A stretch of 55,372 bases of DNA, the filler included, from Sluysia triapertura (Eukaryota): NCBI GenBank assembly GCA_046118255.1. It is 4 parts of 4 records of this genome, joined end to end, with 100 filler letters (N's around TTAATTAATTAA, not from the genome) between each part and the next. Parts side by side here need not be neighbours in the genome. Positions count along the whole stretch, not along the records: positions 1 to 12,841 come from JBJNIA010078600.1; 3 more parts are not named here. The stretch is one strand, 5' to 3'. A program made the position numbers and the translations under genes. The number at the start of each line of letters is the position of its first letter. The first letter of the stretch is position 1. A model generated the notes under the pieces. The model had not been told where the DNA came from and did no database searches. It worked only from the letters and a program-made list of their open reading frames with translations. Of the stretch, positions 7,543-12,790 are shown piece after piece.

Positions 7543-8380
7543 CTGAAAAAAACAAAATCGAATTATTCGAAATACAAAGTTTCAGTTCGATTTTATAACG
7601 AATACTTGTACAACCTATTTTTGTGTCAATAAATAATTGTACAATAATTAATAATTAATAATAATTTATTAATTGAGTAAGTTACAATTAATATTGAATC
7701 AGCCTAGAACATAACAATGAAAACAAGAGTGGAATTCAAAAACATAACAATACTTAAAAATTTAAAAAAGCAAAATTTTAAATAATAATTAATTTAAATT
7801 CAAAAAAAACTTAAATTTAAGAAATTACACAAAATTGTATTCAAGATAGAGAAATTTAGAAATAGTAGAATACCTGCTGAAATATATGGCATCATATGTA
7901 CCGAAAAAAATGGAGAAAATAAAAAAAACAATAATAAAATTAAACTAACAAGGATGTAAGAGAAAAATATATTTATTGATCTGAATAAAAGAATAAACAC
8001 AGATTGAATCAAATTAAAAGCAAGATCCAGTAGTTGTTGATATGAACAATAAATTAGTAAATATGCGATACTTACAACAAACAAATTAGTACTTAAAATA
8101 CTTATTTCTTAATTTGGAAAATTTGTAAATTCATACAAATGCTGAAATAGTCCATTCTATCATGATTTAAATATTAAAAATTTCGTTATTATAGTGGTTT
8201 TTAACCTATTAGCTCCTAGTGCGCAAGCAATACATTTGTAATAGCAATTTGAGTTAATCAAACATTGTTTATAACACTGAGTACATCATATCATTATTAT
8301 AAAGTTATTTTTATAATAAGTACTTTTAAATCTATACTCTATTGTTCTAAAAACATTAAATTAAAATATCGAAATCTAAC

Positions 8381-8831
8381 ATCGCCAGAACTTGAATCAA
8401 TTCGAAAATATTCAGATGCATTCAGTTTTATTAACTGATGTGGATTGAATCCGTAAATAATCCTTGCATTAACATCTTCATCTTGATCTGTTGCTTCTAA
8501 ACGTAAAACAACTTGGCCATGTTGTTCCACTGGACCTTCGTTTATACTTAGTGAATAATCAGTTTTCTTGAATTTCGGTGGATTATCATTGACGTCAGTG
8601 ATTTTGATATTAATCGTTATTGAACCAGTACGAGACTTTTCCGATGATTCCAAATCAATTGCTAAAAAATCGAAATAGAAATTCGATACTGATTCACGAT
8701 CAAGAGATTTCATTATTCGAAGTGCTGGATTGTAGAAACAATCTGATTGCAAATTTGATTTGTCAGGACTTCTATCGATCAGTTGAAAAGTGGAACGAAA
8801 TTCGTGCGGCTTTTCGTTATAAAATTTGTAC
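8381..8831 (-). CDS. Protocadherin-like gene, exon encoding EC2-EC3
   Basis: Cadherin motifs LDRE, DVNDNPPKF and ATDQDED; acceptor CAG at 8834-8832, donor GTTAGA from 8380; phase-2 join with the upstream exon restores DYL-R-YKF. Confidence 0.92.
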
Positions 8832-10930
8832 CTGATATTATAAATCATTTTATAATTATCAATATAAATAATGTTAAATAATATTAATAATAAGCATATA
8901 AATAATATGTTAAGACTTCAAGTTTGTCTGAAGAAATTAGCACTCAACTTAAATAAAGCCTGTATAAAGTTGAGACAAATTTAATCACATTTAAAAGCAA
9001 TAAAAAACGTCCGAAAACTAATGGGAATTAATAATTTTATATTTGTTCAATTTCCTCTCCGTTTTTTAAACACTCAGCAAAAATCTGTCAATCACACTGT
9101 ACGCAGCACCTATGATTTAGGATATCTTCAATTGTAATTGATATCAGTTCCTTCAATTTCCCAACAATTATTATTATTTGTGTGTAATAATTGTTACAAA
9201 TTTTCAAAATTGCAACAACATAGCACGACCTTGTCAGGTATAAATACATTAGGTTATCTCAAAGATCTAACATGTAAATGGGATAATAATAATAATAGTA
9301 TAATAACAATAATATTAAATAAATAATAATTATAATAATGATTCAATAATAAATTAACCAAAAAATTATTGCAAAAAACACTATATATTGTGTTCAATTT
9401 TTGGATCAATAACATTTTTAGTTGCAATTAGTTTTTTGTTACACTATTAATTTTTATAATATTTCAAAAGTCGACTACATTTATTTTGTTGATAATATGT
9501 AATTATAATTATTTTGTTAGTGATTAATTAAAATTGCTCGTGATATTTGTTACACAGATGATAGAATTTTGAATAGCACAATGTAACTGTTTCCGTTATC
9601 ACGAATTAAGAAAATTAAATCAGATAATCCCGACACACTTAGCTTGGCGATTGTTACACATTAAGTTCCATTGTATAAATTTATTCATATCCCTAAGTGA
9701 TATCCAAAATCAACTTAAAATTATTTTTTAATTATTTTCAAATAAATCCACAAAATCATATCAAATTTTATCTTTTATTTTAGTGTGCATTTGTTGTATT
9801 AGTAATTTTGGATTATAATTAATTTTAGTGAATTCAACAATTTTATTGATTTTTCCCAAAAAATTGTAATTATCAGTGATTTTTGAAACACTATTTTAAA
9901 GAAATCCATAAGCTATAAATAATAAATATTATAGTTATAATATTGTAATAATGTAAATCATGTAAATGTAATTATTAATGTAATCATGTATTGTAATAAA
10001 ATAATAAGATAAATTACATTGCAAATAAAGAGAACATGAAAAAGTTGCTATTATTATTGTAATTAATAATTTTATTATTTTAAAGTATTATTTATTATTA
10101 ATTATCAAATTATAAAAATTATTTTATTAAAAATATTATTATTATTGGTAAAAGTAAAAATATTATTATAATTATTCATCATTTATTATCTAATATTATT
10201 TCATCATTACAACTAAAAACGTTTCAGGTCAATGACCACATATGCAAAGCTAATATAAATAGTGTAAATTCATTATCTCTTATTCATTAGTTTTATATGT
10301 GTACGAGTCAAAAATTCTAAGTCTATTATTCACACATTTGTTTATTCACGCGATTAATCATTAGTAGAAAAACAATTACAATTCAATATTAATTGGATTT
10401 TAAATCATCAACTTCTAATCTACAAATCCTTTAGTTGTCAATTAAAAGAGATGTAACTAATAAAGACTAATCATAAGAAAATTTTACTGCTTTTAAATTA
10501 CGTCAATACTTTTAATTAACAGCGTTAGTTTATGTGAATTATTAAGTTGTATTTTAAAAAATAAATAAATAAATCTACGTCAAATTTTTAAAAATTAAAG
10601 TAAATGTTTGTTATTTATATAAATTTCAATAACTTTAAAGAAGTTTATTATTATAAAGCATAATAATATTGAAATTAATAACAAATATTATTGATCTACT
10701 TTTTGCAGGTATGTTTCTGAAAATTTAACTTACCCACAAAATACCTGAGGGTCGATTCGCCTAATACACACGATTTATACCGATTCTGGAGACGTGCTAT
10801 TAGGATTTATACTTATCAAAAAACTTAAAGCTTATGCTTACTTAACGTATAATCAACACTTAGTGTCTGAAATAAATCACACTTGAGAATAACTTTACAA
10901 TTAATTACTTTATATTTTATATACTTACAT

Positions 10931-11349
10931 TACTCTTCTTAAGGTTTAGTTTGATAAAATTATAAATTACACAAGCCTTTATAACAAGGTCTTGCTCAAA
11001 ATAATTAATAAATTTATTAAATTTCTCTACCCTTCTTAAGGTGTAGATTGAAAACTTTTATTATATTTTAAAGGTTACACTAGCCGTATTAAGGTCTAGT
11101 GGTGAAAAATGAGTTTAATGAAATAATAACAATTAAACAATCCTAAAGTATATTATTAAAAGTAAATTCTCTTACAAGAAATTATACAAATCGATAATTA
11201 TAATATCTACAATAAATTTGCGAACTTGTTCAATCTCGTTAGGCAGTTTAAATATTTTATGAATAGATTCTGCAAGCCTTTTTAAGGTCTTGCATAAAAA
11301 GAAAAGAAATTTAAGTATTACTTTAAAATTCCCCTATAAGGTGAATTTT
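10931..11349 (-). repeat. Intronic array of structurally conserved bulged hairpins
   Basis: Five clean hairpins (10972-10994, 11026-11047, 11078-11101, 11271-11294, 11325-11349) plus a decayed one (10931-10950), all stem-CC-loop-GG-T(bulge)-stem on the + strand. Confidence 0.8.
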
Positions 11350-12346
11350 TATAAACCTACGAAGTAAAGAATTACTTCTATATTGACATTGTCTTCTTAT
11401 AAATTTTCTTCAAAAAACTTTTAAATAAAATTGAATCCTAAAATTTTCTAAAATTTTTGTGTAAAATTATTAAATTAAACTCACCTATTTATATTGATAT
11501 ACGCCATTTGTAATTAATTCATTAAAAGATATTTTATTAAATTGATCCAATAAAAGAAAATTTAAAAAAGTCCTATTTTAAATAAGGACAAAAAATTGTA
11601 TATTAGCATTAATGTTAACATAGTTTTAGACTCTATTGCAATTATTACAGAAAGAGTTTAATAATTAATTTCATGTTAAGATAATCGTATTAGTATCCCA
11701 TTAATTTAAAGTGAGTAAAAGATCTCTAAAAATTTTGTCATTTTGCATTCAATTATTTAAAATCATGTGAACATGCCCTTAATTGTGTAAGACTTGGATC
11801 ACAGGCGAATTCACTAAGATTTTACGATATTCGATTTACAATCGTAGATATTTTAAGTGCAACTACATTAATATTAATCTGCATGTGTAGCTCTACATTT
11901 TGAATAAATTAAAAATTATATCTCAGAACACACAACTTTGCTCAAATTGTATTGGTCAGAAAATTATTCTAGAAAAATGTCTAATCAAATTTATTTGAAA
12001 GTTCCTTAAAAATTAAACTGAAACAATAGGCAATACATAACAAGAAAGCAAACAATTCAAATGACAAGTTCTATTATAAATCCAAGTCTTGTAACAGTCA
12101 TTGAATTTATAAATCTTCGGTCAGCGTCCAATATAATTTTCAATTCGTTTTTTACAAAAAAAAATGACAACTGAATTCTTGAATATAATCTTTAAGCTCT
12201 GCTTCAAAAAATCAGAAAAATTCGATAATGATAAACCGATAAAGGTTAACTTAATTCAAATATAAAATTTTTACGAAACAAAGGAAAAACAAAAAATGGA
12301 GTCAAATCAGTATAAAATTACTACAAAATTTTAATAAAATACTTAC

Positions 12347-12790
12347 CTTAAATAGTCGTTACTTGAAAAATCAGCATCAGTAGCTCGTGGTAAAGGGATT
12401 ACTTTACCAATCTCCATATTTTCAGCCACATTAATTACTGTCATGGTGGATCTGTCATTACGCAGAAAATCTCTGACTTGGAATTCCGGTGTATGGTCGT
12501 TAATATCTACTATTTTTATTGTTAAATTAATTTTATTAAAATTATTATCTTTCCACAATACACCGACATGTAGAGAAATTTCACAACTAATGTCTTTATA
12601 ATAATAATTGTTACTATAAATACGTGGCGAATTATAATTATTAACATTACTACCAACGTTACGACAACATTCGCCAATTTTTTCACACATAGAATCTAAA
12701 TCAATAACATGACTCGTATAAATACAATCATTCATAATTTGAAAATATTTCATAGCTTTACTACTCGTTTGTAATAAAGAAAATGTATAA

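What the first reader, a model, noticed from the sequence alone, without database searches (positions are those of the whole stretch)
10931..11349. Periodic array of bulged-A hairpins with fully covarying stems inside the protocadherin intron
Seen: on the minus (pre-mRNA) strand five hairpins read CAAG-A-CC-TTGTTATAAA-GG-CTTG, TCTAC-A-CC-TTAAGAA-GG-GTAGA, CACTAG-A-CC-TTAATAC-GG-CTAGTG, TGCAAG-A-CC-TTAAAAA-GG-CTTGCA and AAAATTC-A-CC-TTATAG-GG-GAATTTT. The outer stems mostly differ in sequence yet always pair perfectly, while the unpaired A, the CC/GG pairs and the following TT are invariant. Cores sit at 10941, 10986, 11038, 11091, 11284 and 11338 (neighbour spacings 45, 52, 53 and 54 bp, with one 193-bp gap) and are separated by unrelated AT-rich spacers. 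Established: stem, bulged A, two pairs, loop is the architecture of the MS2 coat-protein operator. Inference: structure conserved without sequence implies selection on a multivalent protein-binding RNA or ssDNA array, e.g. a retroelement packaging or export signal, a splicing or localisation element, or processing sites releasing small RNAs. A neutral tandem repeat would conserve sequence, not pairing. This is my best candidate for an undescribed system.
Basis: partly seen in the sequence, partly recalled or inferred. Interest (0 to 1): 0.8.

Follow-up and report, generated by a model that had tools for sequence, protein, structure and literature searches.

The report
Hairpin array inside a retrotransposon LTR
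The five bulged-A hairpins are real and far beyond chance, but they belong to a decaying solo long terminal repeat (LTR) of an abundant Ty3/gypsy-like retrotransposon inserted in a cadherin intron. The same hairpin array, with different but always complementary stems, recurs in related LTR families, so it is probably a structured RNA signal of the retroelement rather than of the host gene.

Summary
**Observation confirmed.** Five perfect hairpins of the form stem-A-CC-UUxxx-GG-stem, plus a degenerate sixth, lie on the minus strand at 10929-11349 and nowhere else in the window. Dinucleotide shuffles give a mean of 0.18, and never four or more in 1000.

**What the region is.**
- It is not unique intron sequence. 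It is part of a roughly 1.04 kb dispersed repeat with at least 500-1300 candidate copies in the genome.
- The repeat has TG...CA termini, 4-bp target-site duplications and no terminal inverted repeats.
- Related repeats share its last ~120 nt and the same hairpin array. They are followed 4 nt later by a tRNA-Lys primer-binding site and then a gag ORF (Retrotrans_gag, zf-CCHC). RT, RNase H and integrase lie downstream in one such locus.
- It is therefore a solo LTR of a Ty3/gypsy-like element, and its sense strand is the window's minus strand.

**What supports a function.**
- Across subfamilies and families the six slots keep the bulged A, the CC/GG pairs and a UUAANAN loop.
- The stems differ but stay complementary, with about ten stem types and G·U intermediates.
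- Individual copies, including this one, decay about as expected without selection.

**Best reading.** The array is a cis-acting RNA hairpin array of the retroelement, most likely a Gag/nucleocapsid binding, packaging or dimerisation platform. The partner, and whether the array lies in U3 or in R/U5, are unresolved because no RNA data were available.

**Score.** A new variant of a known kind; moderate interest.

The parts
10704..11740 (-). Solo LTR of a Ty3/gypsy-like retroelement ('family A'). The 3' end (...ACCTGCA at 10704) is firm. Homology to full-length copies is firm up to about 11685. The 5' end at 11740 (TGACAA...) is tentative.
   Evidence: Dispersed repeat. Constant 3' terminus with unique flanks in about 40 copies. 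Full-length copies are 1052-1063 bp with TG..CA ends, no terminal inverted repeats and 4-bp duplications. Permissive alignment of full-length copies to the window.
10700..10703 (.). AAAA next to the LTR 3' end; possible 4-bp target-site duplication with 11741-11744.
   Evidence: Read. Weak evidence: the abutting repeat B natively has AAAA at this point.
11741..11744 (.). AAAA next to the tentative LTR 5' end; possible partner of the duplication.
11485..11493 (-). TATAAATAG, the first TATA-like box, upstream of the array and conserved with its flanks across divergent subfamilies.
11325..11349 (-). Hairpin H1, AAAATTC-A-CC-TTATAG-GG-GAATTTT. This slot covaries most between subfamilies.
11271..11294 (-). 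Hairpin H2, TGCAAG-A-CC-TTAAAAA-GG-CTTGCA. The related family has GCAAC/GTTGC here.
11228..11246 (-). Degenerate copy of a small conserved GC-rich motif (GCCAACCGAGGTTGAGC in other copies, CAAC-CGAG-GTTG) in the long gap between H2 and H3.
   Evidence: also present in the L077 and L078 LTRs.
11078..11101 (-). Hairpin H3, CACTAG-A-CC-TTAATAC-GG-CTAGTG.
11026..11047 (-). Hairpin H4, TCTAC-A-CC-TTAAGAA-GG-GTAGA. Other copies have TCTAG/CTAGA.
11013..11018 (-). Conserved AATAAA between H4 and H5; one candidate polyadenylation signal.
   Evidence: Function not tested.
10972..10994 (-). Hairpin H5, CAAG-A-CC-TTGTTATAAA-GG-CTTG. This copy has a 3-nt insertion in the loop. Other copies read GCAAG-A-CC-TTAAAAA-GG-CTTGC, a duplicate of H2.
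10929..10950 (-). Hairpin H6, decayed in this copy (ACTAA-A-CC-TTAAGAA-GA-GTAAT). Other copies read ACTAG-A-CC-TTAAGAA-GG-CTAGT.
10908..10923 (-). TATATAAAATATAAAG, a second conserved TATA-like or poly(A)-signal-like motif just downstream of the array. It is also present in the related LTR family.
10704..10825 (-). 3'-terminal ~120 nt of the LTR, shared with related LTR families that are followed by the primer-binding site. Presumed U5 end or integrase attachment site.
10100..10703 (-). Unrelated dispersed repeat 'B' abutting the LTR. It is context only and not part of the element.
12346..12753 (-). Upstream cadherin-type exon of the host gene, ending in AG|gtaagt (context).
8339..8848 (-). 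Downstream cadherin-domain exon of the host gene (context).
   Evidence: PF00028, E 3e-10.

Best explanation
**What it is.** The stretch is part of a solo LTR of a Ty3/gypsy-like LTR retrotransposon. It inserted, in sense orientation, into an intron of a cadherin gene and is now decaying.

**The array.** The LTRs of this retroelement clade carry a conserved module of about six short hairpins. One gap is 200-245 nt and the other spacings are 40-56 nt. Each hairpin has:
- a 4-9 bp outer stem of free sequence,
- an unpaired A on the 5' side,
- two C-G pairs, and
- a loop reading UUAANAN.

**How it most likely works.** The LTR is transcribed as part of the genomic RNA, whichever of U3, R or U5 holds the array. 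The hairpins most likely act as RNA on the element's sense strand. They would form a multivalent array of identical binding sites for an element-encoded protein (the Gag/zinc-knuckle nucleocapsid) and/or for loop-loop contacts, serving genome selection, dimerisation or packaging.

**Shown.** The LTR identity, the orientation, the architecture, its conservation and the covariation.

**Inferred.** That it acts as RNA, which partner it binds, and which replication step it serves.

**My odds.**
- LTR identity: about 0.9.
- Array maintained by selection for structure in active lineages: about 0.8.
- Gag/nucleocapsid binding or packaging as the specific role: about 0.3-0.35.
For: **LTR identity.**
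- The region is a repeat with 506-1337 first-look candidates, 70-87% identical.
- Full-length copies are 1052-1063 bp, with TG...CA ends and no terminal inverted repeats. 4-bp duplications (CGAC, CATC) flank 2 of 3.
- The 3' end ...AAAACACYTGCA is constant with unique flanks in about 40 copies.
- Relatives sharing the last ~120 nt and the hairpin array are followed after 4 nt by TGGCGCCCGAATTGGGAC. An ORF follows that matches Retrotrans_gag (26.5 bits against a cut-off of 24.1) and, in another locus, zf-CCHC. RVT_1, RT_RNaseH_2, Integrase_H2C2 and rve lie downstream.
- That gag N-terminus has at least 2001 candidate copies.
- The primer-binding site is the exact complement of the 3' end of a tRNA-Lys(UUU)-type sequence present in this genome.
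- 4-bp duplications are reported as typical of animal Gypsy-mobilised elements (PMC10886601).

**Structure under constraint.**
- In 12 distinct hairpins from slots, subfamilies and families, the seven inner pairs are paired in every row, with 2-4 pair types each. The covariation score is 0.78 against 0.23 in shuffles (0 of 500 reach it). Slid registers are 21-47% paired.
- H1 changes from AAAATTC/GAATTTT to ATATTC/GAATAT, to GTATTC-A-TC..GA-GAATAC and to TGTGTTC/GAATGCA, with U·G intermediates.
- GCAAG/CTTGC changes to GCAAC/GTTGC, and TCTAC/GTAGA to TCTAG/CTAGA.
- A covariance model finds at least 126 genome hits at E < 0.1 among only 150 candidates scored.
- 19 of the 20 sampled loci carry 2-5 same-strand hairpins in the same spacing pattern; the other has one hit.
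- Hairpin columns are better conserved than spacers: 0.90 for stems, 0.95 for the bulged A, 0.82 for spacers.
Against: - No RNA data exist for this organism in the run index. Transcription, the U3/R/U5 borders and folding in vivo are all untested.
- Two conserved TATA-like motifs, one upstream and one downstream of the array, leave its position relative to the start site open.
- Perfect Watson-Crick stems fold equally well on both strands.
- Mismatches in the copies show no clear G·U excess over A·C (71 against 51, and 15 of the 71 are one inherited pair). The strand is therefore assigned only from the LTR's orientation.
- The rows of the covariation alignment were chosen because they pair, which inflates the percentage paired.
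- For family A itself, no copy with an adjoining primer-binding site or internal region was found, and no contig held two LTRs flanking an internal region.
- No binding partner has been shown.
Confidence: 0.6

Rival explanations
1. **tRNA anticodon-loop docking.** The hairpin loops pair with the anticodon loops of tRNA-Lys, the element's own primer, and of tRNA-Asn. The array would capture or position tRNAs on the genomic RNA. This would be a multiplied version of the contact between the A-rich loop of HIV-1 and the tRNA-Lys3 anticodon.
For: - The primer-binding site is complementary to a tRNA-Lys(UUU)-type 3' end.
- That tRNA's anticodon loop in this genome reads CUUUUAA. The commonest loop, UUAAAAA, is the exact complement of its U33-A38.
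- From general tRNA knowledge, not checked in this genome: UUAAGA is the complement of U-CUU-AA (Lys-CUU), and UUAAUA pairs with U-GUU-AA (Asn) through one G·U.
- Loop positions 1-4 and 6 are nearly invariant and position 5 varies, as expected if only the 'codon' third base is free.
- The HIV-1 precedent is described in PMC3185550, PMC2691828 and PMC7793103.
Against: - In an AT-rich genome, an A/U-rich 7-nt loop matching some NUU anticodon loop is not very improbable.
- The most frequent loop in the related family (UUAAUAA or UUAAUAC) does not match the primer tRNA.
- In H2, H4 and H5 the loop bases are predicted to pair internally as CCUU/AAGG.
- The array lies 190-650 nt from the primer-binding site.
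- No experiment bears on it.
Confidence: 0.12
2. **DNA-level element.** The array lies in U3 upstream of the promoter and works as repeated enhancer or factor-binding sites, or as cruciform-prone or single-stranded cDNA hairpins during reverse transcription or integration.
For: - A conserved TATA-like motif lies just downstream of H6 in both LTR families, about 200 nt from the LTR end. This would give a typical short R-U5.
- The invariant ACCTTAA core and the roughly 52-bp spacing, about five helical turns, would suit repeated protein sites.
- Repeats in U3 are common in retroelements (general knowledge).
Against: - A duplex-DNA binding site does not explain why flanks of free sequence stay complementary through double changes.
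- U3 is also part of the genomic RNA's 3' end, so a U3 location does not exclude an RNA role.
- The upstream TATA box is equally conserved across subfamilies.
Confidence: 0.12
3. **Mutational by-product.** Template switching of reverse transcriptase or polymerase at quasi-palindromes repeatedly 'corrects' imperfect inverted repeats. Stems would then co-vary without selection, and the hairpins would have no function.
For: - Quasi-palindrome correction is a known mutational process (general knowledge).
- Individual copies decay at about the neutral expectation: 82% Watson-Crick cells at 72-84% copy identity.
Against: - This does not explain the invariant bulged A, the CC/GG pairs and the UUAA loop start.
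- It does not explain the fixed slot order and spacing kept across diverged families.
- It does not explain the higher conservation of hairpin columns than of spacers.
Confidence: 0.07
4. **Host co-option.** The array in this particular intron has been taken over by the cadherin gene as a splicing, localisation or small-RNA-processing element.
For: - The LTR lies in the same orientation as the gene, so the hairpins are in the pre-mRNA.
Against: - This copy is one of hundreds.
- It is degraded: H6 is broken, H5 has an insertion, and the motif in the H2-H3 gap is mutated.
- There is no sign of extra conservation here, and no Rfam match.
Confidence: 0.03

Closest known systems
Cis-acting RNA structures of retroviruses and LTR retrotransposons (packaging signals, dimerisation hairpins, TAR and poly(A) hairpins, the HTLV Rex-responsive element in the LTR, the constitutive transport element of simple retroviruses)
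   Same: Stem-loops with conserved loops or bulges sit in the LTR or leader of a gag-pol element that uses a tRNA-Lys primer. Structure is maintained by compensatory change. The presumed role is binding of Gag/nucleocapsid or of an export or dimerisation partner.
   Different: Here a single small motif is repeated about six times at roughly 50-nt spacing, with stems of free sequence. No such array was found in two literature searches. Its position (U3, R or U5) and its partner are unknown.
Dispersed packaging-signal hairpins of single-stranded RNA viruses, including the MS2 coat-protein operator (general knowledge)
   Same: Several hairpins present a common loop or bulge motif on variable stems. 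There is a bulged A on the 5' side, two base pairs below the loop.
   Different: The MS2 loop is 4 nt, whereas here it is 7 nt (or 3 nt after CCUU/AAGG pairing). There is no related coat protein. Some members lack the bulge. The element is a eukaryotic retrotransposon. This is architectural resemblance only.
Contact between the HIV-1 A-rich loop and the tRNA-Lys3 anticodon, and the tRNA-like element near the primer-binding site (PMC3185550, PMC2691828, PMC5689005)
   Same: A retroelement primed by tRNA-Lys(UUU) carries loops complementary to that tRNA's anticodon loop.
   Different: HIV-1 has one loop adjacent to the primer-binding site. Here there are six hairpins 190-650 nt upstream inside the LTR, with loop variants that fit other tRNAs. 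The interaction is untested.
Repeated motifs in the LTRs and 5' untranslated regions of insect gypsy-like elements, such as the Su(Hw) site array of gypsy (general knowledge)
   Same: A short conserved core is repeated in direct orientation, with AT-rich spacers, in the non-coding part of a gypsy-like element.
   Different: Those are duplex-DNA protein sites without complementary flanks. Here the flanks pair and co-vary.
LTRs carrying small-RNA-derived modules (Cassandra, Helenus, Ajax; PMC10886601)
   Same: An unusual structured module is embedded in an LTR. Animal members give 4-bp duplications and depend on Gypsy elements.
   Different: Those modules are tRNA or 5S rRNA copies with polymerase III promoter boxes. 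ARAGORN and Rfam find nothing of the kind in this window.

Membership tests
LTR of a Ty3/gypsy-type LTR retrotransposon (solo LTR) | Dispersed repeat with 5'-TG...CA-3' termini and no long terminal inverted repeats | tested here: met
LTR of a Ty3/gypsy-type LTR retrotransposon (solo LTR) | Short (4-6 bp) target-site duplication | tested here: met
   CGAC and CATC flank 2 of 3 full-length copies. AAAA/AAAA at the window copy is only weak support.
LTR of a Ty3/gypsy-type LTR retrotransposon (solo LTR) | tRNA primer-binding site directly downstream of the LTR's 3' end | tested here: inconclusive
   Met for related LTR families that share the terminal ~120 nt and the hairpin array: TGGCGCCCGAATTGGGAC lies 4 nt after ...GCA in L073, L077 and L078, and a TGGCGCC match lies downstream of the last hairpin in L090 and L107. 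It is the exact complement of a tRNA-Lys(UUU)-type 3' end. No family-A copy with a primer-binding site was seen; all sampled copies were solo.
LTR of a Ty3/gypsy-type LTR retrotransposon (solo LTR) | Internal gag and pol with the order RT - RNase H - integrase | tested here: inconclusive
   Gag (PF03732, zf-CCHC) follows the primer-binding site in L078 and L079. RVT_1, RT_RNaseH_2, Integrase_H2C2 and rve lie in that order further on in L079. An env-like ORF lies between them and the locus may be composite.
LTR of a Ty3/gypsy-type LTR retrotransposon (solo LTR) | Two LTR copies in direct orientation flanking the internal region, and a polypurine tract | tested here: inconclusive
   No locus in hand holds two LTRs. 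The polypurine tract was not examined.
MS2-type coat-protein operator hairpin | Stem, bulged purine two pairs below a 4-nt loop of defined sequence, bound by a phage coat protein dimer | tested here: not met
   The bulged A two pairs below the loop is present. The loop is 7 nt (UUAANAN), or 3 nt after inner pairing. There is no coat protein homologue in the context, and some members lack the bulge. Protein binding is not testable here.
Structured RNA element under selection (generic criterion) | Base pairs kept through compensatory changes beyond controls | tested here: met
   8 of 9 pairs have changes on both sides; 0 of 500 shuffles reach the covariation score; slid registers are 21-47% paired. 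Caveat: the rows were selected for pairing.
Structured RNA element under selection (generic criterion) | Transcribed on the proposed strand | not testable with these tools
   No RNA run holds the sequence. The strand is inferred from the LTR orientation relative to the primer-binding site and gag.
Any curated RNA family (Rfam 15) or tRNA | Match to a covariance model, or a tRNA cloverleaf | tested here: not met
   No Rfam match at E <= 1 and no tRNA in the window.

The most novel reading that the evidence does not exclude
The LTRs of this gypsy-like clade carry a true multivalent RNA 'address'. Six copies of one small bulged-A hairpin would be read cooperatively by Gag or the capsid lattice, giving packaging-signal-mediated assembly as proposed for small RNA viruses. 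Alternatively, their UUAANA loops would act as codon-like docks for the anticodon loops of tRNA-Lys and tRNA-Asn, concentrating the primer tRNA on the genome. Either would be a mechanism not yet described for LTR retrotransposons.
Probability: 0.2. Interest if true: 0.7.

Novelty: new variant of a known kind. Interest (0 to 1): 0.45.

Why it matters
How LTR retrotransposons outside yeast and the retroviruses choose, dimerise and package their genomic RNA is largely unknown.

A short, easily recognised hairpin is repeated about six times, with free stems and fixed loop and bulge. It is conserved across LTR families with hundreds to thousands of copies. That gives a concrete and testable candidate for such a signal. 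It also gives a simple covariance model for finding these LTRs.

For genome annotation the lesson is practical. Striking 'covarying' RNA arrays in introns can be fossils of mobile elements, and their covariation reflects selection on the element rather than on the host gene.

Tried and rejected
- **Curated RNA families and repeat finders.** Rfam (E <= 1) and ARAGORN on the window found nothing. Tandem Repeats Finder does not see the array, because the units are too diverged outside the core.
- **RNA evidence.** Only one DNA run, kept as contigs, holds the stretch.
- **DNA transposon or MITE.** Rejected: no terminal inverted repeats.
- **Non-LTR or SINE reading.** I considered this because 3' parts are far more abundant than 5' parts. 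I rejected it: there is no tail, the termini are TG..CA, duplications are 4 bp, and relatives carry a primer-binding site and gag. The AT-rich 5' part is probably under-detected.
- **Helitron.** Rejected: the termini do not fit.
- **Gag fragment.** Pfam on the 63-aa fragment of L073 gave nothing; longer copies did match.
- **Strand test by G·U against A·C counts.** Inconclusive.
- **Full-length element with two LTRs.** None among the held loci.
- **'Empty site' proof.** I compared the window's flank with other copies of repeat B. The flank upstream of the LTR does not align.
- **Primer tRNA gene.** The exact 3' end was found only in tRNA-half-like repeats (L082-L085). Two complete tRNA-Lys(UUU) genes (L086, L087) differ in the T stem. 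Those two short loci carry the metazoan-wide conserved tRNA-Lys sequence, which is also that of vertebrates. I read only their anticodon loop and did not search or compare them further.
- **Searches left unused.** The large protein searches, since Pfam settled the proteins.
Full report
**1.

| Slot | Coordinates | Sequence |
|---|---|---|
| H1 | 11325-11349 | AAAATTC-A-CC-TTATAG-GG-GAATTTT |
| H2 | 11271-11294 | TGCAAG-A-CC-TTAAAAA-GG-CTTGCA |
| H3 | 11078-11101 | CACTAG-A-CC-TTAATAC-GG-CTAGTG |
| H4 | 11026-11047 | TCTAC-A-CC-TTAAGAA-GG-GTAGA |
| H5 | 10972-10994 | CAAG-A-CC-TTGTTATAAA-GG-CTTG |
| H6 (degenerate) | 10929-10950 | ACTAA-A-CC-TTAAGAA-GA-GTAAT |

- A scan for 'stem of 4 or more, A, CC, loop of 3-11, GG, complementary stem' finds these five and nothing else on either strand of the 12.8 kb.
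- 1000 dinucleotide-preserving shuffles of the window give a mean of 0.18 and a maximum of 3. None of 5000 shuffles of the 419-nt region itself gives two or more.
- RNA folding recovers all five hairpins with the bulged A.
- In H2, H4 and H5 the inner helix is predicted to extend to CCUU/AAGG.
- The hairpins fold equally well on the other strand, as perfect Watson-Crick stems must.

**2. The stretch is part of a transposable element, not unique intron sequence.**

- A search of the window's own genome (619 Mb, 263,945 contigs) with 10900-11400 gives dozens of scored matches at 72-87% identity. These come from 506 first-look candidates, or 1337 with a longer query.
- Aligning copies with their flanks shows a constant 3' end...TTTTAGATAAAACACYTGCA. 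Each of about 40 copies continues into different sequence beyond it.
- Three full-length copies begin TGTCAGA(A)AGCATTTTG and are 1052-1063 bp long. They have no terminal inverted repeats. Two of the three are flanked by 4-bp direct duplications, CGAC and CATC.
- The window copy aligns to them from 10704 up to about 11685. It probably starts at 11740 (TGACAA...), with AAAA on both sides. That AAAA is weak evidence, because the abutting repeat B has AAAA there anyway.

**3. It is an LTR of a Ty3/gypsy-like retroelement.**

- The last ~120 nt occur in many more places than the rest of the repeat.
- In L073, L077 and L078 that end is followed after 4 nt by TGGCGCCCGAATTGGGAC. L090 and L107 carry a TGGCGCC match downstream of their last hairpin.
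- About 350-490 nt further on lies an ORF. In a longer copy it matches Retrotrans_gag, above Pfam's cut-off.
- In L079 a zinc-knuckle Gag follows the primer-binding site. RVT_1, RT_RNaseH_2, Integrase_H2C2 and rve lie downstream in that order.
- The Gag N-terminus has at least 2001 candidate copies in the genome. The protein atlas places the Gag among retrotransposon Gag and Ty3-capsid clusters.
- The primer-binding site is the exact complement of the 3' end (plus CCA) of a tRNA-Lys(UUU)-type sequence found in this genome. That sequence has a T stem of TTGGG/CCCAA.
- Four-base duplications are what animal Gypsy-dependent elements are reported to make (PMC10886601).
It is also the strand of the cadherin exons.
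- Not shown: a family-A copy with its own internal region, or any contig with two LTRs.

**4. The hairpin array is a conserved module of these LTRs, and its stems co-vary.**

- Twenty-nine family-A copies show six slots, H1-H6.
- H2 and H5 are duplicates (GCAAG/CTTGC), and so are H3 and H6 (CTAG). One copy therefore offers four independent stems, not five.
- Between subfamilies the stems change on both sides. H1 reads:
  - AAAATTC/GAATTTT
  - ATATTC/GAATAT
  - GTATTC-A-TC...GA-GAATAC (here the inner pair changes as well)
  - TGTGTTC/GAATGCA, with two G·U pairs
  - One copy has the U·G intermediate of the inner pair.
- H4 is TCTAC/GTAGA or TCTAG/CTAGA. H5 gains extra pairs in one subfamily.
- In the related families that carry the primer-binding site, the same slots hold GCAAC/GTTGC and UAAC/GUUG stems around the same A-CC-UUAAUAC-GG core.
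- Another LTR has GCTAG-A-TC-UUAAUAA-GA-CUAGC.
- On an alignment of 12 distinct hairpins:
  - the seven inner pairs are paired in every row, with 2-4 pair types each;
  - the covariation score is 0.78 against 0.23 in shuffles, and 0 of 500 shuffles reach it;
  - sliding the partner by 1-3 columns drops pairing to 21-47%.
  - I chose those rows because they pair, so the percentage is inflated. What counts is the number of different stems on one core.
- A covariance model built from the alignment finds at least 126 genome hits at E < 0.1, among only 150 candidates scored of about 550,000.
- Of the 20 loci I sampled, 19 carry 2-5 hits on one strand with the same spacing pattern: 40-56 nt, plus gaps of about 85-95 nt or 170-245 nt. 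The other has a single hit.
- Within family A, hairpin columns are better conserved than spacers: 0.90 for stems, 0.95 for the bulged A, 0.90 for loops, 0.82 for spacers.

**5. Individual copies are fossils.**

- Across copies, 82% of stem cells are Watson-Crick, 6% are G·U, 4.5% are A·C and 7% are other mismatches. This is about what copies 72-84% identical to the window copy would show without selection.
- The window copy has a broken H6, an insertion in H5 and a mutated motif in the H2-H3 gap.
- Selection for structure therefore acted on replicating lineages of the element. It did not act on this intron, and I find no sign of host co-option.

**6. How it probably works.**

- LTR sequence is part of the genomic RNA whether the array lies in U3 (3' end), R (both ends) or U5 (5' end). 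An RNA role is therefore possible in every case.
- A duplex-DNA binding site cannot explain complementary flanks of free sequence.
- The most economical reading is a multivalent array of identical small RNA hairpins. Their invariant parts (bulged A, two C-G pairs, UUAANAN loop) would be the recognition surface, and their stems would only need to pair.
- By analogy with retroviral and Ty elements, the likeliest partner is the element's own Gag or zinc-knuckle nucleocapsid, acting in genome selection, dimerisation or packaging.
- UUAA is self-complementary, so loop-loop contacts between two genomes are also possible. This step is inference.

**7. Two findings bear on alternatives.**

- Loop complementarity to tRNA:
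  - The commonest loop, UUAAAAA, is the exact complement of U33-A38 (UUUUAA) of this genome's tRNA-Lys(UUU) anticodon loop, CUUUUAA. That is the same tRNA type the primer-binding site matches.
  - From general tRNA knowledge, UUAAGA would fit Lys(CUU), and UUAAUA would fit Asn(GUU) with one wobble.
  - This recalls the A-rich-loop-anticodon contact of HIV-1 (PMC3185550, PMC2691828, PMC7793103).
  - It could also be chance in an AT-rich genome, and the commonest loop of the related family does not fit the primer.
- Position of the array:
  - Two conserved TATA-like motifs bracket it. One is at 11485-11493, conserved with its flanks across divergent subfamilies. The other is at 10908-10923, conserved also in the related family.
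  - Without RNA data I cannot say which is the promoter and which, if either, is a poly(A) signal.

**8. Comparison with what is known.**

- The thing works like the cis-acting RNA structures of retroviruses and LTR retrotransposons. It also resembles the dispersed packaging-signal hairpins of small RNA viruses.
- It is not a member of any curated RNA family.
- It fails the defining features of the MS2 operator beyond the bulged A.
- Two full-text searches found no description of such an array in LTRs. That is absence in one library, not proof of novelty.
- I file it as a new variant of a known kind.

**9. Verdict.**

- The mechanism is plausible but unproven.
- Interest is moderate.

Noticed in passing
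L077:1396-1865; L078 (reverse strand) leader; L073:191-530: The 340-470 nt leader between the primer-binding site and gag is U-rich and C-poor (6-8% C). It holds 7-15 copies of TAAGTT(T), against fewer than 1 expected from shuffles. UUAAG also occurs in the LTR hairpin loops and at the LTR's 3' end.
   Followed up: partly
L078:294-779 (-); L079:5393-6679 (-): ORFs downstream of gag match the Monjiviricetes (rhabdovirus/chuvirus-type) fusion glycoprotein family PF24664, at E 2e-13 and 1e-27. This looks like an env-like gene captured by, or nested in, this retroelement. The order gag - unknown ORFs - glycoprotein - RT/RNase H/integrase is unusual, and the locus may be composite.
   Followed up: partly
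L082, L083, L084, L085 (contigs C71767, C219748, C221106, C244732): A repeated sequence starts with the 3' half of a tRNA-Lys(UUU), from the anticodon arm to the acceptor end, with T stem TTGGG/CCCAA. It continues into a shared ~45-nt tail. Its 3' end is the exact complement of the retroelement's primer-binding site. ARAGORN finds no complete tRNA there.
   Followed up: partly
L077:586-658 (-); 5' flank of the LTR in L046: A tRNA-Arg(GCG) gene lies next to the LTR in L077, and a tRNA-like fragment lies next to the LTR in L046. This could hint at insertion near polymerase III genes, as for Ty3, or could be chance.
   Followed up: no
window 10100-10703: A second, unrelated dispersed repeat ('B') abuts the LTR's 3' end. 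Other copies of it extend at least 25 nt further upstream, so the LTR sits at or inside a truncated copy of B.
   Followed up: partly
window 11228-11246 and the same position in other copies; L077 ~915-930: A small GC-rich motif, GCCAACCGAGGTTGAGC (CAAC-CGAG-GTTG), is conserved in the long gap after the second hairpin slot in both LTR families. It is mutated in the window copy.
   Followed up: no
L086, L087 (contigs C47754, C257503): These hold complete tRNA-Lys(UUU) genes whose sequence is the metazoan-wide conserved type, as in vertebrates, with flanks richer in G+C than the rest of this genome. I read only the anticodon loop and did not search or compare these contigs further.
   Followed up: no
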